A stretch of 64,000 bases of DNA, from the sequence record LR745206.1; one strand, given 5' to 3'. The position numbers and the translations under genes are program-made. The stretch's first letter is position 1; each line of letters begins with the position of its first letter. Positions 20,430-58,349 of the stretch are shown here, one piece after another. The notes under the pieces are model-generated. The model was given only the letters and a program-made list of their open reading frames with translations, made no database searches and was not told the origin of the DNA.

Positions 20430-21491
20430 ATGAGTATTAAATTAGATTGGAATGATATTTCAATAGTGCCCGCTGAATTGAGTTCGGTTGATTCAAGATC
20501 AGAGATAAACCCATTAAAAGATGGTAAGTTACCACTATTTACAGCACCAATGGATACGGTAATTGATGATCAGTCTATACGTCATTTCGAACACAATATA
20601 AATCTTTGCTTACCTCGTAATGTAAAATATAATGAATTAAGTGATTGGTGTGAAACAAGACAATCCCATTGGATGGATAATGGTTGTGATTCATTTTTCT
20701 TCTCTTATGGATTAGATGAAATAATAGAACTTTTTGAAAATAATTCTAAATTACCACCAAGGGTTTTGATTGATGTGGCTAACGGTCATATGCAAAAGCT
20801 TTATGATATATCTAAACGAATTAAGGAAAAGTTCGGTAGTGATATCGAATTGATGGTTGGTAACATTGCTAATCCACATACTTATAGAAAGTATTGTGAA
20901 ATTGGTGTTGATTATATTAGAGTTGGTATTGGTGGTGGATCTGCTTGTACTACATCAGCAAATGTTTCTATACATTTTCCTATGGCTTCTTTGATAGATG
21001 AGTGTGCTAAGATAAAAAGTGAATTTGATAAACCAACCAAGATAATTGCAGATGGTGGGTTCAGAAACTTCTCAGATATAATAAAAGCTTTGGCTATAGG
21101 TGCTGATTATGTTATGTTGGGTGGTATTCTTAATAAATCACTTGAGAGTTGTGGTACTACTTTTATGAAGGATAAAGATGGTCAATATAATGAAGTTAAT
21201 TTTGATATAGCTAATACAGCTTTACAAACAGGAGCACCGGTCTATAAATATTATAGAGGTATGTCAACTAAGGAAGTGCAAAAATCTTGGAATAGAGTTG
21301 AGTTAAAAACCGGAGAGGGTATAACTAAGTATAATTTGGTCGAATATACCATCGATGGGTGGTGTGAAAACTTTACAGATTATTTAAAGTCAGCTATGTC
21401 ATATGCTGGTTGTAGGACATTAGATGAATTTATAGGTGGTCCAGAGTTTGTGCAAATAAGCCCAATGGCTTTTAATAGATTCAATAAATGA
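20430..21491 (+). CDS. IMP dehydrogenase/GMP reductase family oxidoreductase
   Basis: APMDTV, IDVANGH, GNIA, VGIGGGSACTT (catalytic Cys), IADGG, DYVMLG, YRGMST. IMPDH vs GMPR not resolved. Confidence 0.85.
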   Translation: MSIKLDWNDISIVPAELSSVDSRSEINPLKDGKLPLFTAPMDTVIDDQSIRHFEHNINLCLPRNVKYNELSDWCETRQSHWMDNGCDSFFFSYGLDEIIELFENNSKLPPRVLIDVANGHMQKLYDISKRIKEKFGSDIELMVGNIANPHTYRKYCEIGVDYIRVGIGGGSACTTSANVSIHFPMASLIDECAKIKSEFDKPTKIIADGGFRNFSDIIKALAIGADYVMLGGILNKSLESCGTTFMKDKDGQYNEVNFDIANTALQTGAPVYKYYRGMSTKEVQKSWNRVELKTGEGITKYNLVEYTIDGWCENFTDYLKSAMSYAGCRTLDEFIGGPEFVQISPMAFNRFNK

Positions 21492-21892
21492 GTTATATAA
21501 GCACATATAAGATATTAAAATCATTAAAACCAATCGAATTATACGATATAATTACAGGAGGATATTGTTCTGAATATAGAGAGGAGTTTAAAAGAGAGGT
21601 TATTTCTTTGAAAGGTGAATGGTATCTAAATAATTGGCATAATAATAAAATAGAATTGGATATATTATGTGCTTATATATCTGATACAGGATTTACACTA
21701 TATACCACAAAAGAAGAGGCTAAAAGAATTGAAGAGGAATTTAAAAGTTGGAATTTATTTACTGAGGTTTGGTCAAAATGGTATGGTGGTAAAACTTATG
21801 TAGTTGGATTTAATTACTCATATGAGGCATTTAGTAAATTATATTTAGAATATAAAAGAGATAAGAAAATTAATCAATTGGTTAATTTATAA
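21488..21892 (+). CDS. hypothetical protein with C-terminal tag
   Basis: Ends YKRDKKINQLVNL. Confidence 0.65.
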   Translation: MSYISTYKILKSLKPIELYDIITGGYCSEYREEFKREVISLKGEWYLNNWHNNKIELDILCAYISDTGFTLYTTKEEAKRIEEEFKSWNLFTEVWSKWYGGKTYVVGFNYSYEAFSKLYLEYKRDKKINQLVNL

Positions 21893-22327
21893 ACTATTTG
21901 AGTGTTCTCCCCACTCAATAAATATAGTTATATAAGATAATATCTTATCCCTATAAATTTCATCAGATTCTTTATCTATTTTATATCTTATATCTGGATA
22001 TTTATCTTTAATCCTGTTGATACAAGTTTCAACATCCTTATATATCTCTAATATTTCATTGGTATTTTTTAAGAAATATTCTATACTCCCAGAAGCTACT
22101 CCAATTGAGTATCCGTCCATTTTTTTATTCGATTTGTGTATGGTTGGTAGGTTAATATTAATAGAACATTCAGCAAATGGTAAACCAGAACCAAATTTAG
22201 CATCAGAGACACCCTCATCAAATTCAAATTCTGATCCATCGTCTATAAAATCAGAGAATACTAATTTTATATAATCGGATACTTCTGAATTATCAACAGA
22301 TTCGTTATATTTTTTTAAATATTTCAT
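21887..22327 (-). CDS. hypothetical protein, CTS-like N-terminus
   Basis: Start ATG 22327, MKYLKKYNES. Paralog of 23489 and 23944. Confidence 0.7.
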   Translation of the reverse strand: MKYLKKYNESVDNSEVSDYIKLVFSDFIDDGSEFEFDEGVSDAKFGSGLPFAECSININLPTIHKSNKKMDGYSIGVASGSIEYFLKNTNEILEIYKDVETCINRIKDKYPDIRYKIDKESDEIYRDKILSYITIFIEWGEHSNSL

Positions 22328-22842
22328 CTTTTTCCTATCCATAACTGTATATATTTTTTGCTAGCAAAAAAGTCAAAAGGAAAATCTAGATTATCTTTCC
22401 TATAATCCTTTGGTAATAAATCTCTTATGGTTAGATTATAATCAGATAATCTAGAATCTATTTCTTCCAAGAATGGTAGATATTCATCAGACTCTTTACC
22501 ACCAGGCATTTTGTTATATAACCATTTTACAAAATTAAGATCATCATCATATAATTTATCAATATTAACATTTGGAAATAATTCTATCATTAGTAATTTT
22601 TTATCATTCTCATTCTTTAATTCACACCGATAACACAAATCAAACCTTTCTATAAAATCAACGATGATATATCCAATCTCATCATATTTTATTCCAAAAT
22701 TAGATTCTATCTCATCATAAATATCAATTGATCTATCATATGGTCTCCATTCATGTTCAAATCTATTACTAAAGGGAAACATATTACTATGATCTCTTTT
22801 ATCAAATCTTTTATTTTCATCAAATCTTTTAAGATATTTCAT
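22324..22842 (-). CDS. hypothetical protein, CTS-like N-terminus
   Basis: Start ATG 22842, MKYLKRFDEN. Confidence 0.7.
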   Translation of the reverse strand: MKYLKRFDENKRFDKRDHSNMFPFSNRFEHEWRPYDRSIDIYDEIESNFGIKYDEIGYIIVDFIERFDLCYRCELKNENDKKLLMIELFPNVNIDKLYDDDLNFVKWLYNKMPGGKESDEYLPFLEEIDSRLSDYNLTIRDLLPKDYRKDNLDFPFDFFASKKYIQLWIGKR

Positions 22843-26635: not shown

Positions 26636-26831
26636 AAATATTTTTAATTTTTTTCTTTCTACTACCAGACCTATCAGTCCAAACATCAGAATGGAAGGTT
26701 AATTGCATCCATTTGTTATTTTGATAAATATAATTCACACAATCAATAGTATTATAATAAATATCACCTTCTATTGGTTCTGATGGTACAGAAGTTGAAA
26801 CACTTAACTGATATTTAAATGGATCTATCAC
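26625..26831 (-). CDS. small protein with tail-fibre-like motif and C-terminal tag
   Basis: [13 protein letters not shown]...YIYQNNKW, ends [12 protein letters not shown]. Confidence 0.6.
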
Positions 26832-27910
26832 ACCTCAAAGTTTTTAGATTTTTTAAGCTTCTCAAGTAGATATTTTTCATCCATTGAAATGTTTTGTGGT
26901 ATTTTAACATTAACAACAACAAAAAGATCACCAAGACCTAAGTTTATATCAGGAATACCTTTACCTGAAACACGTATTGTCTTACCGTGTTGTGTTCCAA
27001 CATCAATAGTTATTGGTAATTCACCATGTGGTGTTCTTACTTTAAGATGAGCACCTAAAATAGCATCAACTACTGATATATCCTTTTCAACAATCAAGTT
27101 ATTACCATCTCTCTTAAAGTAAAATTCTCTTATTTCATCTATCATTATATGTAAATCACCAGGAACACCATCTCTAATATTATTTCCATAACTTCTCATA
27201 TTGAGTTGCATTCCATTAGAAACTCCTTTTGGTATATCAACCTCCACAACCTCTTCTTTAACATTAGTACCTGATCCATGGCAAACACCACATTTGTTTA
27301 ATATTTGTTTACCAGTTCCTTGACAATCACTACAATGAGCTTGTTGTCTTATTTGACCGAATGCTGTATTTTGTACAACTATTCTTTGACCAGTACCATT
27401 ACAAGGTAGACAATCCTTTACATCAGTTCCACCTTTACCAGAACAACTATTACAAGAATCTTGTCTTTTATATTTTATCTTTTTAGTAGTTCCGTTTAAT
27501 ATTTCTTCAATGGATAAAGATACTTTTATTCTTAAATCAGATCCTCTTTTCTGCCTTTTCTGTTGTCCATATTTCTGACCAAATGCACCACCAAAAACAT
27601 CACCAAACTGACTGAATATATCTTCCATATTAAACCCATGACCATATCCACCAGCACCACCATTACTAAATGGATTACCTTGTCCAAATGGACTACCACC
27701 AGTTCCGAATCTGTCATAATTCTCTCTCTTATCTTTTGAAGATAAAGTATCATAAGCCTCCGCTGCTTCCTTAAATTTAGATTCTGCTTCTGCATTATCT
27801 GGATTTTTATCTGGGTGATATTGCATTGCTTTTTTTCGATAAGCCTTTTTAATCTGTTCCTCAGATGCTTTCCTATCTACTCCTAATATGTCATAATAAT
27901 CTTTCGCCAT
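26828..27910 (-). CDS. dnaJ: chaperone DnaJ
   Basis: J-domain with HPD, G/F region, four CxxCxGxG repeats, C-terminal domain. Confidence 0.95.
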
Positions 27911-28242
27911 TATCTTAATATCTTTGTTAATTTTATTTCTCTATATATTTGTTTAGTTGTATCTGTTAACTTTATATACACATATCTATTATAAACTATA
28001 ACAAACTCACGCTCACCATTTATCGGTGATAACATTGTTCTGTAATTCATAATAGGCATTTCATCAACTATTTCACAAAATATATCCTCAACATTTTCAA
28101 TTTTACAATCTTCTATCATTGATAACCTCTCACAAAAATAATTCATAAATGGTGTTGAGGTTTCTATAACTTGGTTAAGTAATTTATCGGTCTTAAAACT
28201 ATCAGGAGCCCATTCTGATATTTCAACATACCAATCAATCAC
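27910..28242 (-). CDS. hypothetical protein with C-terminal tag
   Basis: Ends [11 protein letters not shown]. Confidence 0.65.
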
Positions 28243-30866: not shown

Positions 30867-31136
30867 ATGAATATAGTTTTTCTAAATAAATGGAGAGTGA
30901 TATCTGAGAATATTTTATCAGATGAAGATCTTAATGTGTTTGTGTTAAAATATGAACTGAGAAAATTTGGAACTGCTGAGATTATACTACTATTTGAACA
31001 TTTCTATAAAATAGATATTAATGAATATACAATAAGTGATATAATCTTTGATGGATCAAATATTAGAGTAAACTTGAAGGACGAAGATATAATAAAAATA
31101 AGAGAACGAAAAATTAATACTATACTAAGTGAGTAA
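30867..31136 (+). CDS. hypothetical protein with C-terminal tag
   Basis: Ends IRERKINTILSE. Confidence 0.65.
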   Translation: MNIVFLNKWRVISENILSDEDLNVFVLKYELRKFGTAEIILLFEHFYKIDINEYTISDIIFDGSNIRVNLKDEDIIKIRERKINTILSE

Positions 31137-39635: not shown

Positions 39636-41510
39636 ATGGCGAAAGACGTAATTATAGGAATTGACCTTGGGACCACAAATTCATGTGTTGCAGTGGTAGA
39701 AGGTGGAGAACCTATTGTAATCACAAATTCAGAGGGTAGAAGAACAACCCCATCAGTTGTCGGATTCACAGACAATGACAGAAAAATTGGAGATCCTGCT
39801 AAAAGACAAGCAGTTACTAATCCAACAAAAACAGTTTATTCGATTAAACGTTTCATTGGTAAGGACTTCTCAGTTTGTAAAGATGAAATTGGAAAGGTTC
39901 CTTATAAAGTAGTTAAAACAGGATCTAACGTACCTGGTGTTCAAATAGATGATAGAGTTTATACACCACAAGAAATATCAGCTATGATTCTACAAAAGAT
40001 GAAGAAGACAGCCGAAGAATATTTAGGACATGAAGTAACCAGAGCGGTTATTACTGTTCCAGCTTACTTTGGTGATGCTGAAAGAACTGCAACTATTGAA
40101 GCTGGTGAGATAGCTGGTTTGAAAGTTGAGAGAATTATAAATGAACCAACTGCCGCAGCTCTAGCATACGGACTAGATAAGAAAAATACAGATTCTAAGA
40201 TTCTTGTATTTGATTGTGGTGGTGGTACACATGACGTTTCTGTTTTAGAAATCGGTGATGGTGTTTTTGAAGTAAAATCTACTGATGGTGATACTCACTT
40301 AGGTGGTGATGATTTCGATAACGCAATTATTGATTGGATGGTATCAGAATTCAAATCAGACCATGATATGGATTTATCAAAAGATGCTATGGCTCTTCAA
40401 AGATTGAAGGAAGCTGGTGAGAAGGCAAAAATTGAACTATCATCTTCAACACAAACTGAGATTAATTTACCTTACATCACCGCTAAAGATGGTGTTCCTT
40501 TACACTTTGTTAAGAAATTGACAAGTGCTAAATTCGAACAAATGACTTCTAAGTTAGTAGATAGAACTATCGCTTGTGCGAAAAGTGCTCTTAAAAACGC
40601 AGGGTTAAAACCATCTGATATTGATGAAGTAATTCTTGTGGGTGGTTCTACTAGAATTCCAGCTATCCAAAATGCTATCGAGAAGTATATTGGTAAATCC
40701 CCAAATAAATCAGTAAACCCTGATGAAGTTGTTGCTCTTGGAGCCGCTATTCAAGGAGCTGTTTTATCCGGAGGAATTACAGATGTTTTACTTCTTGATG
40801 TTACACCACTTTCACTTGGTATTGAAACAATGGGGTCAGTAATGACCAGATTGATTGAGGCTAATACTACGATTCCGACCCGTAAGTCAGAAACGTTCTC
40901 AACAGCTTCAGATAATCAACCATCTGTTGAGATTCATGTTTTACAAGGTGAAAGACCAATGGCTAAAGATAACCGTTCACTAGGTAGATTCCATCTTGAT
41001 GGGATAATGCCAGCACCAAGAGGTATTCCTCAGGTTGAAGTGACATTGGATATTGATGCTAATGGTATACTTTCTGTATCCGCTAAAGATAAAGCTACTG
41101 GAAAAGAGAATAAGATTCGAATTGAAGGTGGTTCTCAATTATCTAAAGAAGAGATAGAAAGAATGAAGGCTGAGGCTGAAGCAAATTCAGAATCAGATAA
41201 ACTCGAAAGAGAAAAAGTTGACAAGGTTAATATGGCAGATAATTTAATCTTCCAAACAGAGAAACAAATGAAAGAATTTTCTGAGAAATTAACAGAAGAT
41301 GATAGGTCTTCTCTTAATTCAGACCTTGAGGAGTTGAGAAAGGCTCATTCTGAACAAGACGTTGATAAAATAGACGAAACATCTAATAAGTTAAACGAAA
41401 CTTGGTCAGCTATTAGCACTAGACTATATCAACAAACAAACGAATCAGAATCTACTGATGATGGTGATCCTGATGGTGGTGTGGAAGACACTTCTTATGA
41501 AGAAGTGTAA
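39636..41510 (+). CDS. dnaK: chaperone DnaK (Hsp70)
   Basis: [52 protein letters not shown]. Confidence 0.97.
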
Positions 41511-44710: not shown

Positions 44711-45412
44711 CTATGGTCTATTTACTCTTTCTATGAAATTGATATGAATTTTATTATCTTTTAATTCTATATCATATTTCCATCTCCAATTTTGACCACC
44801 AAGATATCTAAACTTTGGCTCAAATAATTTTCTGATGAATGTTTTAACATCACTTAGTAATGTTTTGGATTCAAAACCATCTTCTATTGGTAATAGAACA
44901 ACACCATTTCTATCTTGTGAATATTTAAATGCTCTGGTTACCTTTGTATACCTATGATCTAAGTTTCTTTTTATAACATCTAGAAATTCATAGAATCCTT
45001 CTTTTTCAACAGGAACCTCTTCATTGGATTCTTCATCTATTAAATGATAAACTATATTAATTTTATTATTAGATGATATATCAATTCTTTCAATGTAAGT
45101 TTCTCCAAATTCAGAAAGCCTATCATTAGACTCTTCTAACTCTTCAAAAATATTTTTAATTAAATTTATATCAACAAAGTCTGTTATTTTCTTATTAAGT
45201 GTTGCTATATAACCAGGTTTTCTATAATATTGGTTTGGATTATCTGATGTTGTATAAGCTCTTCTTGATTCATCTGTATTAGTATTACGATCAGAAAAAT
45301 ATACCTTTTTAATATCCAATTCTAAACCAAAATCAATTAAGTGTATAAATATATCATTGAAATCATGATATTCTTTGGTATGTGATTCATTAAATGATTT
45401 AAGATGTTTCAT
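44711..45412 (-). CDS. hypothetical protein, CTS-like N-terminus
   Basis: MKHLKSFNES. Confidence 0.7.
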   Translation of the reverse strand: MKHLKSFNESHTKEYHDFNDIFIHLIDFGLELDIKKVYFSDRNTNTDESRRAYTTSDNPNQYYRKPGYIATLNKKITDFVDINLIKNIFEELEESNDRLSEFGETYIERIDISSNNKINIVYHLIDEESNEEVPVEKEGFYEFLDVIKRNLDHRYTKVTRAFKYSQDRNGVVLLPIEDGFESKTLLSDVKTFIRKLFEPKFRYLGGQNWRWKYDIELKDNKIHINFIERVNRP

Positions 45413-46111: not shown

Positions 46112-48034
46112 ATGAATCTATTAAACACCATTAAAAAAGATTTTACTCAATCTGAAAAGGATATTTCGATACAAGACTACTTAAAATTATGTAAAGAAGA
46201 TAAAAAAATATATGCAACACCGGCTGAACGTGTTTTAGACGTTATTGGTGAAGCAGAGATGGTTGATACAAAATCGGATGAAAGATTAAGTAGAATATAC
46301 TCTAATCGAATAATTAAAAGATATAAAACCTTCTCAGATTTCTATGGAATGGAAGATACAATCGAACAAATCGTATCCTTTTTCAGACATGCATCACAAG
46401 GACTCGAAGAAAAGAAACAAATTCTTTATCTATTGGGACCAGTAGGTGGTGGTAAATCATCATTAGCCGAAAGACTTAAACAATTAATAGAGAAAAGTCA
46501 TATTTATGTCCTTGTTGCTGATGGTGTGGTGTCACCAGTTTGGGAAAACCCATTAGGATTATTTTCAAATTATAGATCTGAATTGGAAGATGAATATGGT
46601 ATCTTAAAAAGATACATACCATCTTGTCCTTCACCTTGGGCTACTAAGAGATTAGCAGAGTTTGGTGGTGATATTTCCAAATTCACAGTAAGAAGAATTA
46701 AAATGTCTATTCAATCACAAATTGGTATCTCTAAAACAGAGCCAGGTGATGAGAATAACCAAGATATATCAGCACTTGTTGGTAAAATTGATATACGTAA
46801 ATTAGCTGAGTATCCACAAAATGATGCTGATGCTTATAACTACTCAGGAGCACTTTGTAGAGCAAATCAAGGACTTATGGAGTTTGTTGAGATGTTCAAA
46901 GCCCCGATTAAAATGTTAAATCCACTTTTAACTGCGACACAAGAAGGTAACTATAATGGTACTGAAAATTTACCAGCTATTCCTTTCCAAGGTATAATTT
47001 TGGCTCACTCAAATGAAAGCGAGTGGGAATCATTTTCTAATGATAGAAAGAATGAAGCTTTCTTAGATAGGGTTTATATTGTAAGAGTTCCTTATTGTCT
47101 TAGAATAGATGAGGAGGTTCAAATTTACGAAAAATTATTACAAAGTTCTTCATTATCCGAATCACCTTGTGCACCACAAACATTGGACTTATTAGCTCAA
47201 TTTTGTATAATGACAAGAATGAAAGATCCAGAAAATTCAATACTATATTCTAAAATGAGAATTTATAATGGTGAGAATTTGAAAGAATCTGACCCAAAAG
47301 CTAAATCTCTACAAGAGTATAAAGATAATGCTGGTATAACAGAAGGGATGGATGGTGTATCAACAAGATTCGCATTTAAAGTTCTTTCTAAGGTTTTTAA
47401 TCACGATACAGAAGAAGTTGCTGCTAATCCAGTTCATTTATTTTATGTTTTAGAACAAGAAATAATAAAAGCTCAATTACCTAGAGATGTTGAAGAATAT
47501 TATCTAAATATTCTAAAATCAACAATAACTACTAGATATGCTGATTTTATCGGAGATGAAATACAAAAAGCTTATGTTGATTCATATCAAGAATATGGTC
47601 AAAATCTATTTGAGAGATATATTACTTATGCTGACCATTGGTGTCAAGATAATGATTATCGTGATCCAGAAACAGGTCAACAGTTTGATAGACAAGCACT
47701 TAATGAAGAGCTTGAGAAAATTGAGAAACCAGCTGGTATTGCAAATCCTAAAGATTTCAGAAATGATGTTGTTCAATTTTATTTAAGACATAAAGCTAAA
47801 AATAGTAAAGCACCATCTTGGGATTCTTATGAGAAAATTAAAAATGTTATAGAAAAAAGAATATTCTCTAAAACAGAAGATCTTATTCCTGTTATATCAT
47901 TCACTAGTAAAGCGTCTAAGGATGATGAACATAAACATTCAGAATTTGTTAGTAGAATGAAGAAAAGAGGATATACTAATAAACAAATTCAATTATTAAC
48001 TGATTGGTATCTAAGAGTTAGAAAATCCAGTTAA
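46112..48034 (+). CDS. prkA: PrkA/YeaG family AAA+ serine kinase/ATPase
   Basis: GPVGGGKS, KTEPGDENNQDIS, ANQGLMEFVEMFKAPIK, AHSNESEW, GMDGVSTRF. Confidence 0.95.
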   Translation: MNLLNTIKKDFTQSEKDISIQDYLKLCKEDKKIYATPAERVLDVIGEAEMVDTKSDERLSRIYSNRIIKRYKTFSDFYGMEDTIEQIVSFFRHASQGLEEKKQILYLLGPVGGGKSSLAERLKQLIEKSHIYVLVADGVVSPVWENPLGLFSNYRSELEDEYGILKRYIPSCPSPWATKRLAEFGGDISKFTVRRIKMSIQSQIGISKTEPGDENNQDISALVGKIDIRKLAEYPQNDADAYNYSGALCRANQGLMEFVEMFKAPIKMLNPLLTATQEGNYNGTENLPAIPFQGIILAHSNESEWESFSNDRKNEAFLDRVYIVRVPYCLRIDEEVQIYEKLLQSSSLSESPCAPQTLDLLAQFCIMTRMKDPENSILYSKMRIYNGENLKESDPKAKSLQEYKDNAGITEGMDGVSTRFAFKVLSKVFNHDTEEVAANPVHLFYVLEQEIIKAQLPRDVEEYYLNILKSTITTRYADFIGDEIQKAYVDSYQEYGQNLFERYITYADHWCQDNDYRDPETGQQFDRQALNEELEKIEKPAGIANPKDFRNDVVQFYLRHKAKNSKAPSWDSYEKIKNVIEKRIFSKTEDLIPVISFTSKASKDDEHKHSEFVSRMKKRGYTNKQIQLLTDWYLRVRKSS

Positions 48035-48105
48035 GAGAATGGCGATCTCATTTAGATTATCCAGGTTTATAACCCCAGGTATTTGGGGGTATCCTGATGA
48101 CTTTA
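48035..48105 (+). other. GC-rich structured intergenic element
   Basis: GAGA/TCTC hairpin, then CAGG..ACCCC/GGGGGT..CCTG extended hairpin, between prkA and yeaH. Confidence 0.35.
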
Positions 48106-48156
48106 GTATTAAGCAAAAAATTGCGTTAAGAAAATCAAAAATTAAGAAAATATTCA

Positions 48157-49419
48157 ATGTCAATAAATATAGTAGATAGAAGAAAGAATACTAAAGGGAA
48201 ATCCTCTGAGAATCGTCAGAGGTTCCTTAAACGCGTTGAAGGTCAAATTAAAAAGGCATTACCGGATATTATAAAGGGTACTAATATTAAAGATATTACA
48301 TCATCTAAAGATAAAGTTAAGGTTCCAATAAAAGGAATAAAAGAACCACAATTTACATATGATAAAGATAGTGGTGATAAGAAAAATGTACATCCTGGTA
48401 ATAAGGAATTTACGGAAGGTGATAAAATAAAAAAGCCAGATGATGGTAAAGGTAAGGGAGGTCGAAAAGGATCTAATGATCCAGCTACATCCGAAGATGA
48501 TTTTACTATATCAATAAGTAGAGAAGAATTTCTTGATTATTTTTTCCAAGATTTGGAATTACCAGATATGGTAAAAAAACATTTAGACTCAATAGTTGAT
48601 TTCAAACAAAAGAGAGCAGGTTATTCAAACCAAGGAACTCCAAATAGATTAAATGTTGTTAGATCTTATAAAAACTCTATGGCTCGTAGAATGGCTACAG
48701 GTATATTCTTCGATAAAAGAATTAAAGAGATAGAAGAAAGTCTTAAAGATGATAAACTATCAGATGTTGATAGAATAATACTTGAAAAAGAATTAGATAA
48801 GTTCAAAAAAATGAAGCTATCTGTTTCTTTTATGGAAGAGGTTGATTTACAATATAATAATTTTGATAAAGTAGCTATACCAACTACATCAGCGGTAATG
48901 TTTTGTATAATGGATATTTCTGGATCAATGGGTGAAAAAGAAAAAGATATATCTAAAAGATTCTTTATGTTATTATATATGTTTTTAACCAAACAATATG
49001 AAAGAATTGAGATAGTTTTTATAAAACATCACACTCAAGCCAGTGAGGTTTCTGAGGAAGATTTTTTTAATTCAAAGGAATCAGGTGGGACAGTTGTTGC
49101 ACCAGCTCTTGAGTTAATGAGAGAAATAATTAAAGAAAGATATTCAAAAAGTTGGAATATTTATGCAGCTCAGGCATCCGATGGTGATGTTTGGAATAAA
49201 TCAGATGCTGATGATTGTTATAATCTATTAAATGGTGAGATATTAAATGATATTCAATATATGGTTTATATTGAAGTTTGTAGAGAAAATGATGGTGATT
49301 TGTGGAATAATTATAGATCTTTATCAGAGAGTAGAAAGAATTTTGAGGTTGGAAAAATATCAGATGTTAGTCAAATATGGCAAGTGTTTCAAGACTTCTT
49401 TAAAAAGAAATCAATATAA
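48157..49419 (+). CDS. yeaH: YeaH/YhbH family vWA-domain protein
   Basis: IVDRR...NRQRF, PGNKEF, LELPDM, CIMDISGSM, SGGTVVAPAL, QASDGD. Confidence 0.93.
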   Translation: MSINIVDRRKNTKGKSSENRQRFLKRVEGQIKKALPDIIKGTNIKDITSSKDKVKVPIKGIKEPQFTYDKDSGDKKNVHPGNKEFTEGDKIKKPDDGKGKGGRKGSNDPATSEDDFTISISREEFLDYFFQDLELPDMVKKHLDSIVDFKQKRAGYSNQGTPNRLNVVRSYKNSMARRMATGIFFDKRIKEIEESLKDDKLSDVDRIILEKELDKFKKMKLSVSFMEEVDLQYNNFDKVAIPTTSAVMFCIMDISGSMGEKEKDISKRFFMLLYMFLTKQYERIEIVFIKHHTQASEVSEEDFFNSKESGGTVVAPALELMREIIKERYSKSWNIYAAQASDGDVWNKSDADDCYNLLNGEILNDIQYMVYIEVCRENDGDLWNNYRSLSESRKNFEVGKISDVSQIWQVFQDFFKKKSI

Positions 49420-49420
49420 T

Positions 49421-50920
49421 ATGAATAAAGAAGAATTAAAGAAAATATTCAGTAAATCAGATTGGGATAACGATACGATAATTCAAGCTAATGATATTGT
49501 ATCAAGAATAGCTTCTGAATATCTTGGACTTGATACATATCCAAATCAATTTGAAATTATATCATCAGAACAGATGTTAGATGCTTATTCATTGATTGGA
49601 TTACCATTATCTTACAACCATTGGAAATTTGGAAAAGATTTCGTTATAAACGAGAATCGATATAAAAAGGGTAGAATGGGTTTAGCATATGAGTTGGTAA
49701 TTAATTCAAATCCTTGTATATCATACAATATGGAAGATAACACAACCTGTTTGATGTTATTAGTATTGGCACATGCTGCTTATGGACATAATCACTTTTT
49801 CAAAAATAATTATCTATTTAAACAATGGACTCAAGCTGACTCTATAATAGATTATATGTTATTTGCTAAGAAATTTATTGCTGAGTGTGAAGAAAAATAT
49901 GGATATGAAGAGGTTGAAATGGTTTTAGATTCTTGTCATGCATTAATGAATTATGGGGTTGATAAGTATAAAAAACCAAGAAAACTATCACCTATTGAGG
50001 AACATAGTAGATTGAAGAAGAAGATTGAGGATGATAGAATTCTTTTAAATGATATTTGGAGAACAATTCCTGATAAGAAAGATAAAAGGTCTAAAAGAAC
50101 TAGATTCCCATCTCAACCAGAGGAGAATATACTTTATTTTATAGAGAAGAATTCACCTAAATTAAAAGAATGGCAACGTGAAATTGTTAGAATAGTTAGA
50201 AAGATATCTCAATATTTTTACCCACAAGGACAAAGTAAAGTTATTAATGAAGGTTGTGCTACATTCTCACATTTTGAAATAATAAACAAGATGTATGATG
50301 AGGGATATTTGGATGGTGGCTTTATGTTGGAGTTTATGCACCACCATTCTAATGTTGTTAATCAACCAGGATTTGATTCTAAATATTATTCGGGATTAAA
50401 CCCATACACATTGGGATTTAATATATTCAAAGATTTGAAGAGAATGTCATTAGAACCAACAAAAGAAGATTTAGCATGGTTTCCTAATATAGCAGGAAAA
50501 GGCAATTGGCAAGAAACATTTAGATATATTGTTGAGAACTTCAAAGATGAAACCTTTGTTTTACAATATCTTTCACCTAAAGTGATGAGGGATATGAAAT
50601 TATTTGAAATAAGTGATGAGGAAGGAAGTAAACATTATGAAGTAACTTCTATACATAATGATAGAGGTTATAAAAAAGTTAGACAATCACTTTCAGAATC
50701 ATATAATAGAAGCAGATATGTTCCGGATATACAAGTTTATAAAGTAGATGTTTTTGGTACAAGATCATTAACACTTGAATATACACCAATAAACAATAGA
50801 GATTTGGATTTAAGTGATATTGATAATGTTTTACCACATGTTAAATATTTATGGGGATTTCCTGTAAGAATGGTAAGTCGTGAAGATGGTAAGCTTGTTA
50901 ATATATCATCAATAGATTAA
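49421..50920 (+). CDS. spoVR: SpoVR/YcgB family protein
   Basis: Start ATG 49421. GLDTYPNQFE, YNHWKFGK, LAYELVIN, AHAAYGHNHFF, NEGCAT, NPYTLG. Confidence 0.93.
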   Translation: MNKEELKKIFSKSDWDNDTIIQANDIVSRIASEYLGLDTYPNQFEIISSEQMLDAYSLIGLPLSYNHWKFGKDFVINENRYKKGRMGLAYELVINSNPCISYNMEDNTTCLMLLVLAHAAYGHNHFFKNNYLFKQWTQADSIIDYMLFAKKFIAECEEKYGYEEVEMVLDSCHALMNYGVDKYKKPRKLSPIEEHSRLKKKIEDDRILLNDIWRTIPDKKDKRSKRTRFPSQPEENILYFIEKNSPKLKEWQREIVRIVRKISQYFYPQGQSKVINEGCATFSHFEIINKMYDEGYLDGGFMLEFMHHHSNVVNQPGFDSKYYSGLNPYTLGFNIFKDLKRMSLEPTKEDLAWFPNIAGKGNWQETFRYIVENFKDETFVLQYLSPKVMRDMKLFEISDEEGSKHYEVTSIHNDRGYKKVRQSLSESYNRSRYVPDIQVYKVDVFGTRSLTLEYTPINNRDLDLSDIDNVLPHVKYLWGFPVRMVSREDGKLVNISSID

Positions 50921-52244: not shown

Positions 52245-52631
52245 TTATTTTTCAAGTTCTTTATAATACTTCAACTCTTCTTTTATAAAATCGAAGTTGT
52301 GTTCGATTAAGTATTCCAAATCAACTTTTTTTATTTTTAATTTTCTCAAAAGTAATTTGAAATCTTTTTCTGGGATAATAGGTTTATCCTTTGCTCCCTT
52401 TGACCAAAACCAATTTGGGTAACTTTTATTTAACATAAAATAATACCACAAATCCATAGATGATACCTTATTTATATTTTTAAGGTTAAGAAGTTGTGAT
52501 TTCTCTGGATACTTTTTACAGAAGTACCTATTGAAGATAAAGAAATTCTTTTCCTTATCTTCATTGGTTATATTTTTCCACTCACTTTTATTTCTAAACA
52601 TTGCATTAGCAACATCAATTAGTTCCGCCAT
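52245..52631 (-). CDS. possible clamp-loader small subunit (T4 gp62-like)
   Basis: Start ATG 52631. FFIFNRYF...LLN pattern and position next to RNase H. Weak. Confidence 0.35.
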   Translation of the reverse strand: MAELIDVANAMFRNKSEWKNITNEDKEKNFFIFNRYFCKKYPEKSQLLNLKNINKVSSMDLWYYFMLNKSYPNWFWSKGAKDKPIIPEKDFKLLLRKLKIKKVDLEYLIEHNFDFIKEELKYYKELEK

Positions 52632-53641: not shown

Positions 53642-54031
53642 TTATTTCTTTATAACTTCATCTATCTTTCTGTCTCTCTCTAATACAATGAATTTACTTT
53701 CTAAGAATTTTTCTATTTCTTTTGGTAATGAAACTTGCTGCTTTTTTAACTCATCATAATAAGGTTTACCTAAAACATTAATTATTGATATAATCATAGC
53801 AACATTAGAATCCAACCAACCTTCCACTTCTAGATCTTCCCCTAAAATATGGTAGGTTGTTTTTTGAGGTTGTATTGAATACCCAACAAAATTACCAGAA
53901 GAGTTTGATACAGTTATATTTGATCCACTTGAAATTGTTACATTTGATCCAGTTCCATAGATAGAGCTTGTTGTGCCTGTGTAGATAGAGCTTGTGTGTA
54001 CATTACTACCATTTATATTTACGAATCCCAT
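53642..54031 (-). CDS. hypothetical protein, S/T-rich N-terminus, C-terminal tag
   Basis: Ends ERDRKIDEVIKK. Confidence 0.65.
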   Translation of the reverse strand: MGFVNINGSNVHTSSIYTGTTSSIYGTGSNVTISSGSNITVSNSSGNFVGYSIQPQKTTYHILGEDLEVEGWLDSNVAMIISIINVLGKPYYDELKKQQVSLPKEIEKFLESKFIVLERDRKIDEVIKK

Positions 54032-54060: not shown

Positions 54061-54597
54061 TTAAAGTATCATATTAATTTGAATATCTCTATATAATGTT
54101 CTAAAATCATCCCTTATCTCATTATCATAATCTGATATATCTTTACCAGCATAATAATCAAAGTATGAATTATTAACCTTCTTTAGCACAACTTCATAAC
54201 AATCTTTTATTAAATCTGAGCAATTTTCTTTTATACACCAATCGACCATATTTTTAATTAAATCGAATTCCATTTTTTTAAATCCTATATAAAATGGTTT
54301 TTGCGCATATGAAAAAAGATAATGTGTGATTACCTTCTCGTTTAGATACTCAACACCTTTAGGGTTAGATAGTTCTGGTGTGGTGAAGTAGAATTTATAT
54401 CCTGAATCAATCACCCACTTTGTTAATTTTAATATTTGTCTTTGTATTTTATTCTCTAGAAATATATAAACAATATCATCATCTATAAAAGCTACTGGTA
54501 CATGCTCATATTTTTTATACATAAGGTAATTACCCTTAACTAACCAATCACAATCATGTGGTCTAAATTTAAGTGGTATCAAATCATTTAATTCCAT
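54061..54597 (-). CDS. hypothetical protein with C-terminal tag variant
   Basis: Ends YRDIQINMIL. Confidence 0.65.
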   Translation of the reverse strand: MELNDLIPLKFRPHDCDWLVKGNYLMYKKYEHVPVAFIDDDIVYIFLENKIQRQILKLTKWVIDSGYKFYFTTPELSNPKGVEYLNEKVITHYLFSYAQKPFYIGFKKMEFDLIKNMVDWCIKENCSDLIKDCYEVVLKKVNNSYFDYYAGKDISDYDNEIRDDFRTLYRDIQINMIL

Positions 54598-54910
54598 ATT
54601 CCTTTAGTATTTTAAAAAATTCAATTTTTTTAGCTTCCCTTGTTCCTTTTTTATTGTTATCCCTCCAATATGCTTTACCTTTATTTGGTGAATATTTAAC
54701 TTTATGTCTTGAATCCCATATACAAGTCTTATAAGTCTTATACATATGGTTATCCTTCGTTCCTATATAATCTTTTAATATAGGTGATTTGTGTATAATA
54801 CCATTTATATCAATAAAACTCCACCAAGAACCATGGTGATCAACTATTCGTTTAATTCTACGAATAACTATAATATCTTCCATATTTCTGCGCCAGGCAC
54901 GAGTTCTCAT
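54584..54910 (-). CDS. small basic hypothetical protein
   Basis: MRTRAWRR..., follows TATCTTTG. Confidence 0.65.
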   Translation of the reverse strand: MRTRAWRRNMEDIIVIRRIKRIVDHHGSWWSFIDINGIIHKSPILKDYIGTKDNHMYKTYKTCIWDSRHKVKYSPNKGKAYWRDNNKKGTREAKKIEFFKILKEYGIK

Positions 54911-54930: not shown

Positions 54931-55368
54931 TTAATCTAAAACCGAATTTAACTTGATATCTCTTTTATATGAATTTATTACACTTTCTAATGATTGTGTA
55001 TTTATATCCTTATCCAACATAGTTTTAATATTCTGTATTGAAAAACTACAATCTATATATGATAGATCATTTCCATCCCAAGAAAATGGTGATGTTTTAA
55101 ATAGTGTATTCTTTACTTGTAAAATATCAAATCTTATCACATCACCAACTCTATTTTGATGTGATATGATAAGTATATCAGTATTCACTATATCATCATA
55201 CCCAACATCAGGCATATCTTGAAATTTACAGTTTATTATATCATTTACAATTTCATATCTCTCAATATGTGCTGTTTTAGTCTCACCAGATTTTGTTATG
55301 AATCTAGCATCATAGAGACTTGTATAAATTGGCTCAATCGATTTATGTGCAAAGTGTGGTAATCCCAT
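54931..55368 (-). CDS. tail-tube-like protein with C-terminal tag
   Basis: MGLPHF...EPIYTSLYDARF...QNRVGDVIR, ends KRDIKLNSVLD. Confidence 0.5.
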   Translation of the reverse strand: MGLPHFAHKSIEPIYTSLYDARFITKSGETKTAHIERYEIVNDIINCKFQDMPDVGYDDIVNTDILIISHQNRVGDVIRFDILQVKNTLFKTSPFSWDGNDLSYIDCSFSIQNIKTMLDKDINTQSLESVINSYKRDIKLNSVLD

Positions 55369-57212
55369 TATTTCAATAGTTCTTTTTTTCTTAAATCCGA
55401 ATCTTTACCAAACCATATATTTAATGACTCTTCTGAAACATCATCCATTGTTATTTGTGTTAATCTAGGTGAGTTTATGATATCTTGGTACTCATCATCA
55501 ACAAGAGCAGCAAGACCTTTTTTATACTTAATTTCAAATTGCTTTAAGTCATTCTTCTCTTCCCATTCATTATATTCTGTTTGTGAATAGAATAATATCT
55601 TCTTACTACCTTTTTTCCTAGGTATAGCAACGACTATCGGAGTCTCTACTTTATATAACATTCTTCTCTCAAACATATCTGGCCAATATTTATAGAAGAA
55701 GTTTATCAGAAGAGCAGCAATTGAGTTACCATCAACATCAGCATCAACATATAATAAAACTCTACCATATCTAAGTGATTTAAGATCAATCTCTTGTCCT
55801 AGTTTTAGTCCAATTGATGCCATTAAATTAACGGCTTCGTTATTTTGTACTAATTTTTGATTAGATATCTCAGAAACATTAATAAATTTACCCTTTAGTG
55901 AGAAGGCTCCCATTGTCTGAGAGTCTCTATACTTTCTAACTGCTCCTGCAGCTGAATCACCCTCAAATATACCAAGTGAATATTTCCACCGTTCTTTACC
56001 TTTAGCATCAATTAACTTTTCAACTTTTATTTTAGATAATTTTTTATTTAAATCTCTTTGTAACTTATTATCATCAGCATTTTTCTTTTGTTGGATCCAG
56101 TCTAATATGGAATTAACTATTTCTGATTTCAATATAGATTGAACTAATTTTTTACTAACCTCAAATGTTGTTCCAAAATCTTTTATTTCTGTTATTAACT
56201 TTTCCTTTGTTTGTGATGAGAATGATGGATTAATGACAGTAGCATCAAGAAATATAAACATATGATTTTTTAATTCTGATGGTTTAATATCAACTTTATG
56301 TTTTTTTAAGAAATATTCTCTCATCTCAACTATTATCTGATTCATAACATAATCAAGATGTGTACCACCATCATATGTTTCTGTTGAGTTAGAAAAACTA
56401 ACTTGTTGGAACCCATTTTCTGATAAAGCAATACCAACTGACCAACTACTACCTTTTTTTGTCTCAAAGAAATATTCATCAACATAAAGTTTTATATAAT
56501 CTTCAAATGACTTGAAGTTAATAACTTTACCATTGAAGTATATTTTTATGGATGTGTTACAAGCAGCTAAATCATAAACACGTTTCTCAATCATTTTGAA
56601 GTGATCATCATCAATACCATCCATTTCAAATTTATCAAAATCTGTAAGAAATGATATTAAAGTATGTGCTCTTGTTGCTTTTTTTATTTTCGGAGAGGTT
56701 CTATCCCTCATGTTATTCTTGAATGTTTGATCAAATTGATTTTTACCATCACAAGTTGTTATTTTGAATTGTGTTGAATAGATATTGGTTAATGTAGAAC
56801 CTACACCATTAGTACCAGCCCAAGACCTCTCTTCACTATCATCAAAGTTTGATCCAGCTTTTAGATTAGAGAATATCATCTCTGGTATCCACTCTTTGTG
56901 TTCTGTGTGTTTTACAACTGGAATACCACCATTATCCCAAATAGATATTTCATTTGTTTTATTATCTATATTTACTTTTATTATATTTAGTTTAGAACCT
57001 TTTCTTTTACTTTCATCAACCGAGTTGGTTATAATCTCATCAAATATCTTTAGAAATCCTGGATTATAAGTTATTTCCTTTTGTTTCATTTTATCATCAT
57101 CAATCAACCATCTAGTTGATGTGTGTGGTTTTATAGACCCAATATACATACCTGGTCTAAGTATAACGTGGTCTATATCGTCTAATTTTTGGAATTTCTT
57201 ATCTACTGACAT
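55368..57212 (-). CDS. gp39: type II DNA topoisomerase large subunit (GHKL ATPase plus TOPRIM; T4 gp39/60-like)
   Basis: RPGMYIGS, DEIITNSVD, DNGGIP, GTNGVG, EGDSA, LKGK, DADVDG, YKKGL. Confidence 0.93.
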   Translation of the reverse strand: MSVDKKFQKLDDIDHVILRPGMYIGSIKPHTSTRWLIDDDKMKQKEITYNPGFLKIFDEIITNSVDESKRKGSKLNIIKVNIDNKTNEISIWDNGGIPVVKHTEHKEWIPEMIFSNLKAGSNFDDSEERSWAGTNGVGSTLTNIYSTQFKITTCDGKNQFDQTFKNNMRDRTSPKIKKATRAHTLISFLTDFDKFEMDGIDDDHFKMIEKRVYDLAACNTSIKIYFNGKVINFKSFEDYIKLYVDEYFFETKKGSSWSVGIALSENGFQQVSFSNSTETYDGGTHLDYVMNQIIVEMREYFLKKHKVDIKPSELKNHMFIFLDATVINPSFSSQTKEKLITEIKDFGTTFEVSKKLVQSILKSEIVNSILDWIQQKKNADDNKLQRDLNKKLSKIKVEKLIDAKGKERWKYSLGIFEGDSAAGAVRKYRDSQTMGAFSLKGKFINVSEISNQKLVQNNEAVNLMASIGLKLGQEIDLKSLRYGRVLLYVDADVDGNSIAALLINFFYKYWPDMFERRMLYKVETPIVVAIPRKKGSKKILFYSQTEYNEWEEKNDLKQFEIKYKKGLAALVDDEYQDIINSPRLTQITMDDVSEESLNIWFGKDSDLRKKELLK

Positions 57213-57236
57213 ACTTTTAAAAGTGTGATTTTAGTT

Positions 57237-57264
57237 TATATATAGTAAAATAAAAACTTTGTTT
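57237..57264 (-). promoter_or_regulatory. putative middle promoter AAACAA-N16-TATATA
   Basis: Upstream of the topoisomerase large subunit, identical architecture to 59019..59046. Confidence 0.5.
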
Positions 57265-57508
57265 AAGAGTTTAACAATTCTGATATCTTTCTATCTCTGT
57301 CTATACCCCTTAACACACCTACTATATTTGATTCATATCCAGAATAAATTGGGTGAAGATAATCTTCCTCATCAACATAAGATAATTGCCAATGATTTGG
57401 ATAATTTGGCTTTTCCCACAATATATGTTTACCATTGAAAGTTGGTTTAGACCACTCATCAAACTCTTCGCAATAAATAAAACCATATTTCTCAGGAAAT
57501 TCACTCAT
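57263..57508 (-). CDS. small protein with C-terminal tag
   Basis: Ends DRDRKISELLNS. Confidence 0.6.
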   Translation of the reverse strand: MSEFPEKYGFIYCEEFDEWSKPTFNGKHILWEKPNYPNHWQLSYVDEEDYLHPIYSGYESNIVGVLRGIDRDRKISELLNS

Positions 57509-58349
57509 CTTCTTTCACAAAGGATATTTGATATGATGTTGGGTTGTTAATGAACTCGAATTTACTTGGTTTATATTCCGCTCTATCATCATAAATATTC
57601 TTTATTTTATATCCACTTTCTTCCATATAGTTTAATATATCAGCGATATTAGAATCCAATAATTCTCTATTTTTAGCAAAATTACCATAAAAATCTTCAC
57701 GTTTGTTATTTTTAATATCTAAGAATAATTGTGGTTTGGATGCTGCTCCAGCAAATGTGTATGGTGTGTAGTTAACAGTTGTGTAGTAACCAATATCATT
57801 TATTTCCGATAGCTTATCTTCAATAAACTCAATATCTTTATTCATATCATATATAACATCACCATACTCCCAAACAAGGGTATCAATGACCTCTTTACTT
57901 GTGTTTGATATACCCTCAAATGTATAATATGTTGTGTTAGAAGTTGACCAAGTCATCTCAATACTTGATACACTAGGCCATCTCTCATCAATCCAAGCAA
58001 TATCTTCATCTCTCATCCTATCATCAGGTCTTATATAAAATTTCTTCTGAATGCTTGACTTGTTATATTTTAATTTAGAATACCAACCTAACTCTCTCAT
58101 ATATTGATATATTCTCAATAAAGATTCTGAGATATCTTCTGTGAAATTAAAATACCCACCTTCTCTCTTTTGTATCTTGATATTAATACTAGTTACTGGT
58201 TCAGTAATAGGAGAATATGAAATGGTTATAAAGAACCCAATATCTTCTAAATCAGTTGATATATCTTTTAATGTGTAAATAATATCACTATCTATATGAC
58301 TTGGAAATTCTGATTTCTCAAATATTTTATATGATTTTAGGTATTTCAT
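57501..58349 (-). CDS. hypothetical protein with internal duplication, CTS-like N-terminus
   Basis: MKYLKSYKIFE, two copies of [DS][LE][EI]xDIG[FY]. Confidence 0.7.
   Translation of the reverse strand: MKYLKSYKIFEKSEFPSHIDSDIIYTLKDISTDLEDIGFFITISYSPITEPVTSINIKIQKREGGYFNFTEDISESLLRIYQYMRELGWYSKLKYNKSSIQKKFYIRPDDRMRDEDIAWIDERWPSVSSIEMTWSTSNTTYYTFEGISNTSKEVIDTLVWEYGDVIYDMNKDIEFIEDKLSEINDIGYYTTVNYTPYTFAGAASKPQLFLDIKNNKREDFYGNFAKNRELLDSNIADILNYMEESGYKIKNIYDDRAEYKPSKFEFINNPTSYQISFVKEDE

What the first reader, a model, noticed from the sequence alone, without database searches (positions are those of the whole stretch)
54931..55368. Degenerate tail-tube-like protein with the tag, located among replication genes
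Seen: MGLPHF...EPIYTSLYDARF and QNRVGDVIR...SWDGNDLSYIDCSFS, ending KRDIKLNSVLD. It is translationally coupled to the topoisomerase gene rather than in a structural operon. The pattern resembles tail-tube proteins of large T4-like phages (from memory). Established: DSR2-type sirtuin defences are triggered by tail-tube monomers. Inference: a tube decoy or dominant-negative.
Basis: partly seen in the sequence, partly recalled or inferred. Interest (0 to 1): 0.68.

Follow-up and report, generated by a model that had tools for sequence, protein, structure and literature searches.

The report
Tagged spare copy of tail-tube protein
A 634-kb phage carries, right behind its topoisomerase gene, a shortened, fast-evolving extra copy of its own tail-tube protein that ends in a short address-like tail shared by about 9% of its proteins. 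It is a real, selected gene but is not the tube of the virion, and what it does remains unproven.

Summary
The ORF is real: window 54931-55368, minus strand, 145 aa, with its ATG overlapping the topoisomerase II large-subunit stop (TAATG).

No Pfam or PHROG model recognises it, but three results identify it as a paralogue of this phage's own gp19-type tail tube:
- The AlphaFold model (pLDDT 79) matches only Hcp and tail-tube proteins (Z up to 11.6).
- A profile-profile alignment to the phage's own tube is colinear over the whole fold (E 2.5e-7).
- Only these two genes in the 634,780-bp genome (LR745206.1) start with MGLPHF.

The true tube is 206 aa and lies about 320 kb away, next to a 1295-aa sheath.

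The 145-aa family is small (19 clusters among 1.84 billion representatives) and always follows the topoisomerase gene. It evolves much faster than its neighbours: 71% identity against 95-99%, with dN/dS 0.17. It is absent from the sister megaphage LR756502, whose tube is 70% identical. It is therefore an accessory gene, not the major tube, and probably not an essential tail part.

Its C-terminal helix carries a motif, RDxK(I/L)xx(I/L)L, found at the C-terminus of 84 of 931 predicted proteins (115-fold positional enrichment).

The tube-like observation is confirmed. The decoy idea fits the data but is untested.

The parts
54931..55368 (-). Gene for the 145-aa tube-like protein. It is a shortened paralogue of the phage's own gp19-type tail tube.
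   Evidence: ORF. Family of 19 representatives. AF2 model pLDDT 79, pTM 0.70. Hcp/tube fold, Z up to 11.6. hhalign to the tube family, E 2.5e-7.
55351..55368 (-). N-terminal arm MGLPHF (aa 1-6), encoded by the same 18 bases as the start of the real tube gene.
   Evidence: The degenerate pattern for MGLPHF occurs only twice in 634,780 bp: at this gene and at the 206-aa tube. MxLPHF is invariant in the tube family and nearly so in this family.
55297..55335 (-). First beta-strand motif, E-P-I-Y-x-x-L-Y-x-x-x-F-I (aa 12-24), matching E-V-V-Y-L-N-L-F-E-I-T-F-I of the real tube.
   Evidence: Colinear hhalign alignment. A regex for this motif hits only these two genes in the genome.
55042..55176 (-). 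Long beta-hairpin region (aa 65-109, including the F-S-W-D-G-N-D-L turn), the best-conserved stretch shared with the tube (tube aa 136-182, L-D-W-S-S-N-N-I).
   Evidence: hhalign prob 90.8%, E 1.2e-6. Strands E63-71, E77-93 and E104-118 in the model.
54934..54990 (-). C-terminal helix (aa 127-145) carrying the genome-wide tag. The core R-D-I-K-L-N-S-V-L is aa 136-144 (54937-54963). It replaces the tube's own C-terminal tail.
   Evidence: Helix 127-144 in the model. The tag is conserved across the family down to 26% identity. Genome census. Variable codons.
55368..57212 (-). Topoisomerase II large subunit (GyrB-like, 614 aa). Its TAA stop overlaps the ATG of the tube-like gene by one base.
   Evidence: phrog_543 E 1.8e-185. 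Pfam DNA_gyraseB, Toprim and TOPRIM_C. The same adjacency and overlap occur in L009, L046, L047 and L049.
57236..57246 (-). Promoter-like TATATA(T)AA motif about 30 nt upstream of the topoisomerase gene. It is the nearest such signal upstream of the tube-like gene.
   Evidence: The motif is enriched 10-40 nt upstream of about 180 genes, including tube, sheath and topoisomerase. Its function as a promoter is inferred, not shown.
54061..54910 (-). The conserved downstream partners: a 108-aa ORF (54584-54910) and a 178-aa ORF (54061-54597, tag-like end YRDIQINMIL). They follow the tube-like gene in every relative examined.

Best explanation
Shown: the gene encodes a shortened (145 against 206 aa), fast-evolving paralogue of this megaphage's own gp19-type tail-tube protein.

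It keeps three tube elements:
- the N-terminal arm (MxLPHF);
- the first strand (ExxYxNL(Y/F)xxxFI);
- the long beta-hairpin.

In solved tubes, by general knowledge, such elements make subunit-subunit contacts and so are exposed only in unassembled protein. This was not mapped here.

It has lost about 60 residues of insertions. It has also swapped the tube's C-terminal tail for the RDxK(I/L)xx(I/L)L helix that ends about 9% of this phage's proteins. It is a lineage-specific accessory gene, not the virion tube.

Inferred: it works off the virion as a soluble mimic of the free tube subunit. It would present the monomer-only surfaces of the near-invariant tube and be held by its tag to whatever common partner the tagged proteins share. 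In that way it would occupy a factor that recognises unassembled tube protein. That factor is most likely a host tube-sensing defence (decoy or sponge), or otherwise a tail-assembly factor.

My odds:
- tube paralogue: about 0.9;
- accessory, and neither the major tube nor an essential tail part: about 0.7;
- decoy/mimic mechanism: about 0.3.
For: Fold:
- The AF2 model has pLDDT 79.
- The top 34 VIA-align wide hits are all Hcp or tail-tube proteins, Z 11.3-7.9.
- pdb_via best hits are F. johnsoniae Hcp1 (Z 11.6, rmsd 2.2 over 95 residues) and B. fragilis Hcp5 (Z 11.3).
- Foldseek PDB hits at E<=1e-3 are all AFP/PVC/CIS tubes, Hcp or the T4 neck-tail complex.
- BFVD hits include KVP40 gp19 and tail-tube or tail-completion proteins.

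Homology to the phage's own tube:
- hhalign gives 90.8%, E 1.2e-6 locally and E 2.5e-7 globally, colinear from residue 1.
- The family profile picks up the real tube as its next-best hit in the genome.
- MGLPHF and the beta-1 motif are unique to these two genes.

The real tube lies elsewhere:
- The 206-aa protein scores phrog_45 E 2.7e-15 and sits beside the sheath (phrog_34521 E 1.4e-93).

Accessory and fast-evolving:
- Identity to the closest relative is 71%, against 95-99% for the recognisable orthologous flanking genes of the block.
- dN is 0.18 against 0.004-0.08 for neighbours, and dN/dS is 0.17.
- The tube has more than 1195 homologues, the top ones 82-91% identical. This family has only 19 representatives.
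- It is absent from the sister megaphage LR756502 (tube 70%, topoisomerase 79% identical), both by profile search and at the syntenic site.

Tag:
- 84 of 931 genes carry it, and none of the 50 genes in the 150-200 kb block that holds the tube and sheath.
Against: - No binding or defence data exist, and the host and its defences are unknown.
- Early expression is not shown. The same TATATA-type motif precedes the tube, sheath and topoisomerase genes.
- The tail's tube initiator and terminator are unassigned in this genome. phrog_45 (which holds T4 gp19, gp3 and gp54) hits only the 206-aa tube, and the gp48, gp15 and Pvc16 models hit nothing. A structural slot is therefore open.
- Outside three short segments the protein is only about 19% identical to the tube, so surface mimicry is limited.
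- dS is also raised (1.05 against 0.09-0.55). Part of the divergence may therefore reflect allele exchange by recombination and not an arms race.
Confidence: 0.45

Rival explanations
1. It is a minor virion tail part with the tube fold. It would be a tube terminator (T4 gp3-like) or a tube initiator/adaptor (gp54, Afp5 or Pvc5-like) that stacks on the tube through the shared N-terminal arm and hairpin.
For: - Every solved contractile tail has such tube-fold paralogues (established knowledge). In T4, gp3, gp19 and gp54 fall into one PHROG.
- No other tube-fold relative is detectable in this genome.
- Its size of about 145 aa fits.
- BFVD and PDB hits include tail-completion, terminator and baseplate tube chains.
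- T4 gene 3 also sits beside a nucleotide-metabolism gene.
- The topoisomerase operon has the same upstream motif as the structural genes.
Against: - It is the fastest-evolving gene of its block (71% against 95-99%), while the tube it would have to fit is almost invariant.
- It is absent from LR756502, which has a 70%-identical tube.
- It carries a tag shared with 83 unrelated small proteins, which is absent from the block of genes around the tube and sheath.
Confidence: 0.25
2. It is an Hcp-like ring protein used for something other than the tail. It could be a carrier or chaperone ring, or a protein addressed by the tag to a common destination (capsid interior for injection, a compartment, a protease or a chaperone). 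The tube ancestry would only supply a stable ring scaffold.
For: - The best structural matches are compact Bacteroidota Hcp proteins (Z 11.6, 11.3, 10.6).
- The tag is a clade-wide C-terminal motif also present in LR756502, which suggests a shared receptor.
- The phage encodes its own Hsp70 and DnaJ in this window.
Against: - Keeping the tube's exact N-terminal arm and beta-1 motif argues that a tube-specific contact is still used.
- No receptor for the tag has been identified, and no oligomer prediction could be run.
Confidence: 0.2
3. It is a dominant-negative poison of tube polymerisation, directed at co-infecting relatives (superinfection exclusion) or used to time the phage's own tail assembly.
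For: It retains the interface elements and has lost insertions.
Against: - Tubes across the clade are 82-91% identical, so a poison would hit the phage's own tail as well.
- There is no evidence of timing control.
Confidence: 0.05
4. It is a decaying duplicate without function.
For: It is short, diverged and matches no family model.
Against: - The frame is intact in 19 diverged clusters.
- The N-terminus, core and tag are conserved.
- dN/dS is 0.17.
- Its position is conserved down to 26% identity.
Confidence: 0.03

Closest known systems
T4 gp19-type tail tube protein (Pfam PF06841, phrog_45), represented here by the phage's own 206-aa tube at LR745206.1 166041-166661
   Same: Same fold. Colinear profile-profile homology (E 2.5e-7). 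Identical MGLPHF start, shared beta-1 motif and shared long hairpin with the x-W-x-x-x-(D/N) turn. Both are acidic (pI about 5).
   Different: 61 residues shorter. It scores below every tube family model. The C-terminal tail is replaced by the tag helix. It is encoded 320 kb away, behind the topoisomerase gene. It evolves many times faster and is missing from the sister megaphage.
T4 gp3 (tube terminator) and gp54 (tube initiator); Afp5/Pvc5 of extracellular contractile injection systems
   Same: All are small tube-fold paralogues of the major tube, encoded apart from it. They are comparable structural matches.
   Different: No sequence-model match. The gene is not universal in the clade, carries the tag and evolves fast. 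Presence in the virion is unknown.
Hcp of type VI secretion, especially the compact Bacteroidota Hcp proteins (F. johnsoniae Hcp1 6bdc, B. fragilis Hcp5 7yw0)
   Same: Closest in shape and size (Z 11.6 and 11.3, rmsd 2.2 Å over 91-95 residues).
   Different: 7-13% identity and no sequence relation. Sequence ties are to the phage tube. It is phage-encoded and has an extra C-terminal helix.
DSR2 / tail-tube trigger / DSAD1 (Bacillus phages SPR and SPbeta)
   Same: Conceptual only. A defence that senses tail-tube protein and a phage protein that blocks it are established.
   Different: By my own knowledge, not checked here, DSAD1 is not a tube homologue. No DSR2-like partner, host or binding is known here. 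A tube-derived decoy would be a new kind of inhibitor.

Membership tests
Phage_T4_gp19 (PF06841) / phrog_45 tail tube | Scores above the family model's threshold. | tested here: not met
   There were no Pfam or PHROG tube hits for this protein or for any of the 20 family members. phrog_45 and PF06841 searched over the whole genome hit only the 206-aa tube.
Phage_T4_gp19 (PF06841) / phrog_45 tail tube | Tail-tube/Hcp beta-sandwich fold with a long hairpin. | tested here: met
   The AF2 model has pLDDT 79. Z is 11.6-8 to Hcp and tube chains only. Foldseek E reaches 6.3e-5.
Phage_T4_gp19 (PF06841) / phrog_45 tail tube | Detectable homology to a bona fide tube protein. | tested here: met
   hhalign of the family against the phage's own tube family gives prob 89-91%, E 1.2e-6 to 2.5e-7, colinear. 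The N-terminal hexapeptide is shared.
Major virion tail tube | Encoded with the sheath or baseplate genes, highly conserved and universal among relatives. | tested here: not met
   The gene lies behind the topoisomerase gene. Identity is 71% against 95-99% for its neighbours. It is absent from LR756502 and LR756504. The real tube is a different gene.
Major or minor virion tail component | Present in purified virions or tails. | not testable with these tools
   The phage is known only from a metagenome assembly, and no proteome exists.
Tube/Hcp ring formers | Assembles into hexameric rings or binds tube subunits. | not tested
The second, with an allowed 91%-identical tube homologue, was not run because the daily limit had been reached.
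Anti-defence decoy of a tube sensor (DSR2-type) | Binds or blocks a host sensor of tail-tube protein and is made before the tube. | not testable with these tools
   The host and its defences are unknown. No RNA data exist. Promoter-like motifs do not separate it from the structural genes.
Genome-wide C-terminal tag set | R-[DEN]-x-[KRQ]-[ILV]-x-x-[ILVMF]-[ILVMF] within 5 residues of the C-terminus. | tested here: met
   R-D-I-K-L-N-S-V-L-D-COOH in this protein. 84 of 931 genes carry it. It is conserved in 18 of the 20 aligned family members.

The most novel reading that the evidence does not exclude
A structural gene has been duplicated, stripped to its monomer-exposed interface elements and re-addressed with the clade's universal C-terminal tag. 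The product would serve as a self-mimic that blinds a host sensor of free tail-tube protein. It would be the first tube-derived anti-defence decoy. It would also be a handle on an unknown addressing system that marks about 9% of a megaphage proteome.
Probability: 0.2. Interest if true: 0.85.

Novelty: new variant of a known kind. Interest (0 to 1): 0.55.

Why it matters
Tail-tube proteins are known triggers of bacterial immunity, yet no phage is known to answer with a copy of its own tube. This gene is a clean candidate: a real, selected, unusually fast-evolving tube paralogue that is dispensable in a sister phage.

It also exposes a larger puzzle. A short C-terminal helix motif ends 84 otherwise unrelated, unannotated small proteins in this 634-kb phage, and dozens more in its 642-kb relative. 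That implies a shared receptor or destination which nobody has described. Finding that receptor would give a first function to a large share of megaphage 'dark' genes.

If the protein instead turns out to be a tail terminator or initiator, it would fill a missing slot in megaphage tail anatomy.

Tried and rejected
- **Family scans.** Pfam and PHROG scans of the protein and of all 20 family members gave no tube family and no consistent family.
- **PDB sequence-profile search.** Nothing was found.
- **ESM Atlas.** No usable hit.
- **First AF2 model (3 sequences).** It gave ambiguous Foldseek hits mixed with flavin-reductase split barrels. The 20-sequence model resolved this.
- **Tag as a DNA element (terminator, promoter or recombination site).** Rejected, because codons and downstream DNA vary.
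- **Tag on known enzymes (for example a clamp-binding tail on the polymerase).** None was found. The ten largest tagged proteins have no domain hits.
- **Temporal class from promoters.** The TATATA motif precedes both replication and structural genes, so it does not discriminate.
- **Other tube-fold tail parts.** Models for gp48, gp15 and Pvc16 found nothing, and the tool warns that this does not show absence.
- **Weak paralogue candidates.** One at record 422947-423186 (E 0.07) was not pursued. One at 229886-230215 matches through the tag only.
- **Complex prediction.** There is therefore no result on binding.
- **Sequencing runs.** No RNA run holds the region, and only a marginal DNA hit was found.

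Full report
**Observation**

The window is positions 434001-498000 of LR745206.1, a 634,780-bp uncultured megaphage. One paper gives its source as a sub-surface sample in Japan (PMC9723777). The window has 28.5% G+C and no N.

Its ATG shares one base with the TAA stop of the 614-aa topoisomerase II large subunit. The operon continues with 108-, 178- and 129-aa ORFs, a 5'-3' exonuclease, a NusG-like protein and a dCMP deaminase.

**What it is**

No Pfam, PHROG or PDB sequence model recognises the protein. The word-indexed search found two relatives.

A full HMMER search of 1.84 billion representatives found 19 proteins of 83-155 aa. There were no longer fusions. The family alignment runs from 71% down to 26% identity. 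It conserves an M-x-L-P-H-F start, an E-P-I-Y-K-N-L-Y motif, a hairpin with a Trp turn, and a C-terminal K-S-x-x-R-D-x-K-L-N-x-L-L end.

With this alignment AlphaFold gives pLDDT 79 and pTM 0.70. The model is a beta-sandwich with a long hairpin (residues 77-118) and a C-terminal helix at 127-144.

Structure searches agree on the fold:
- An all-against-all structural search returns only Hcp and phage or CIS tail-tube chains in the top 34 (Z 11.3-7.9).
- A second pass puts Flavobacterium Hcp1 (Z 11.6, rmsd 2.2 Å over 95 residues) and B. fragilis Hcp5 (Z 11.3) first.
- Foldseek's 15 hits at E<=1e-3 are AFP, PVC or AlgoCIS tubes, Hcp and the T4 neck-tail complex.
- The viral library returns KVP40 gp19 and tube or tail-completion proteins.

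**Relation to the real tube**

A genome-wide search with PF06841 found one weak hit at record 166041-166661. This 206-aa protein matches phrog_45 (tail tube, E 2.7e-15) and lies beside a 1295-aa sheath (phrog_34521, E 1.4e-93). It starts MGLPHF with the same 18 bases as the 145-aa ORF. The degenerate pattern for that hexapeptide occurs only at these two places in the genome.

Profile-profile comparison of the two families gives 90.8% probability and E 1.2e-6 for the hairpin region. When extended, the alignment is colinear from residue 1, with a global E of 2.5e-7. It aligns three segments:
- MxLPHF with MxLPHF;
- E-P-I-Y-x-N-L-Y-x-x-x-F-I with E-V-V-Y-L-N-L-F-E-I-T-F-I;
- the hairpin with the hairpin.

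About 60 tube residues are missing, in several blocks. The tube's C-terminal tail is replaced by the tag helix. Only these two genes carry the N-terminal and beta-1 motifs. The 145-aa protein is therefore a diverged, minimised paralogue of the phage's own tube.

**Accessory or structural?**

The tube is almost frozen. It has more than 1195 homologues, the best 120 of them 82-91% identical.

The paralogue is the fastest-evolving recognisable orthologue in its block. The comparisons with relatives are:

| Relative | Tube-like protein | Topoisomerase | Exonuclease | Other neighbours |
|---|---|---|---|---|
| Closest (contig L009) | 71% | 98% | 98% | orf108 99%, orf178 95%, NusG 97% |
| L047 | 32% | 83% | 75% | – |
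| L049 | 26% | 70% | 70% | – |

Against L009 its dN is 0.18, compared with 0.004-0.08 for the neighbours. Its dS is 1.05 against 0.09-0.55, and its dN/dS is 0.17. It is therefore under purifying selection but far less constrained. The raised dS suggests that allele exchange also contributes.

In every relative examined the gene directly follows, and overlaps, the topoisomerase gene.

The sister megaphage LR756502 has a 70%-identical tube and a 79%-identical topoisomerase. There the family profile finds only the tube's own N-terminus, and the gene after the topoisomerase is an unrelated ORF of at least 486 aa. LR756504 also lacks the gene. A part needed by this tube type should not be missing there, so I rate it as accessory.

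Caveats:
- phrog_45 contains T4 gp19, gp3 and gp54 and hits only the 206-aa tube in this genome. Models for gp48, gp15 and Pvc16 hit nothing. The tail's initiator and terminator are therefore unassigned.
- T4's own terminator gene 3 sits next to dNMP kinase, so position alone proves little.
- A TATATA(T/A)A motif 10-40 nt upstream of about 180 genes precedes the topoisomerase, tube and sheath genes alike. Expression earlier than the tube is therefore not shown.

**The tag**

I made a crude prediction of 931 genes over the whole genome. The motif R-[DEN]-x-[KRQ]-[ILV]-x-x-[ILVMF]-[ILVMF] lies within five residues of the C-terminus in 84 proteins. It occurs at only 24 of about 184,000 internal positions, a 115-fold enrichment per position. 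The motif was written after seeing examples, but the comparison of C-terminal with internal positions does not depend on that.

Other properties of the tag:
- The consensus is (K/L)-x-x-(I/L)-R-D-x-K-(I/L)-(N/D)-x-(I/L)-L-(D/N/K), usually with one residue after it.
- Codons vary, and there is no conserved DNA downstream.
- Tagged proteins are small (median 106 aa). The ten largest have no domain hits.
- None lies in the 150-200 kb block that holds the tube and sheath.
- The tag is kept in orthologues.
- It is equally common in LR756502, with 45 cases in the first 400 kb.

The tag is thus older and wider than the tube-like gene. The paralogue is a tube core that has acquired the clade's general C-terminal address. 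What reads the address is unknown.

**Mechanism**

Shown:
- tube fold and paralogy to the phage's own tube;
- retention of the N-arm, beta-1 strand and hairpin;
- loss of insertions;
- replacement of the C-terminal tail by the tag;
- accessory status and rapid evolution.

Inferred: the retained elements are the ones that mediate subunit contacts in solved tubes (general knowledge, not mapped here). In the cell they would be exposed only on free tube protein. A soluble protein displaying them could occupy a factor that recognises unassembled tube.

Because DSR2-type defences are triggered by tail-tube protein, a decoy is a coherent reading. It fits the evolutionary rate and the patchy distribution. 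I give it about 0.3.

The main rivals are a minor tail component (0.25) and an Hcp-like ring used for another purpose, addressed through the tag (0.2). A self-directed dominant-negative is unlikely because the clade's tubes are nearly identical.

**Limits**

No oligomer or complex prediction could be run. No RNA data exist.

**Verdict**

'Degenerate' should read 'minimised and fast-evolving'. The decoy interpretation is plausible but untested. The gene is a new variant of a known kind, and the tag it carries is the more unusual feature.

Noticed in passing
Whole record LR745206.1. In the window, for example 15821-16105(+), 21488-21892(+), 27910-28146(-), 30867-31136(+), 53642-54031(-), 54061-54597(-) and 57263-57508(-).: A C-terminal motif RDxK(I/L)(N/D)x(I/L)L(D/N/K)-COOH ends 84 of 931 predicted proteins (103 with a relaxed pattern). 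It is enriched 115-fold over internal positions. It sits on small proteins without domain hits and is absent from the block of genes around the tube and sheath. It is also frequent in the sister megaphage LR756502 (45 in 400 kb). Its receptor and function are unknown.
   Followed up: partly
Window, for example 6351-6869(-), 12618-13850(-), 17175-17396(-), 17399-17902(-), 22324-22842(-), 44711-45412(-) and 57501-58349(-). 72 genes genome-wide.: 72 proteins start with an MK(Y/H)LKxF(N)E(S)-type N-terminus, and none of them carries the C-terminal tag. LR756502 has 54 in its first 400 kb. From memory it resembles the short N-terminal capsid-targeting sequences of T4 internal proteins. This was not tested.
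   Followed up: no
Upstream of about 180 genes, for example window 57239-57244 (topoisomerase) and record 165985-165995 (tube).: A TATATA(T/A)A motif is strongly enriched 10-40 nt before start codons (8-mers up to 19-fold). Bacteroidota-type TAnnTTTG motifs are also enriched. These are probably phage and host-type promoters. The motif does not separate replication genes from structural genes.
   Followed up: partly
Window 39636-41510(+) and 26828-27910(-).: The phage encodes a full Hsp70/DnaK (E 3.4e-250), whose C-terminus ends ...SYEEV, and a full DnaJ.
   Followed up: no
Window 46112-50920(+).: A PrkA – DUF444 (YeaH) – SpoVR gene trio is encoded in the phage. It is also present in the relative contig L009.
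   Followed up: no
Window 52245-52631(-), compared with L009 8784-9167.: At the same position, between near-identical flanks, the two relatives carry unrelated genes of about 128 aa (44% identity over 36 residues). The L009 version ends in the tag and the window's does not. This looks like a local gene replacement.
   Followed up: no
Record 168066-171953(-) (L008 2066-5953).: The tail sheath is unusually long at 1295 aa. Only the last 350 or so residues match the closest sheath family model (phrog_34521), and the broader one (phrog_23) starts near residue 690.
   Followed up: no
Record 422947-423186(+) (L004 1363-1758), and LR756504 406573-406797(-) (L056).: A 131-aa ORF has weak similarity to the tube (E 0.07). 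A weak hit of the family profile in LR756504 has 4 TAA stops inside it (E 0.004). Neither was resolved.
   Followed up: no
Phages collection.: The 206-aa tube family extends to Tenacibaculum jumbo phages pT24 and PTm1/PTm5 (27-30% identity). The paper notes a SusC-like gene in LR745206. Both are consistent with a Bacteroidota host.
   Followed up: no
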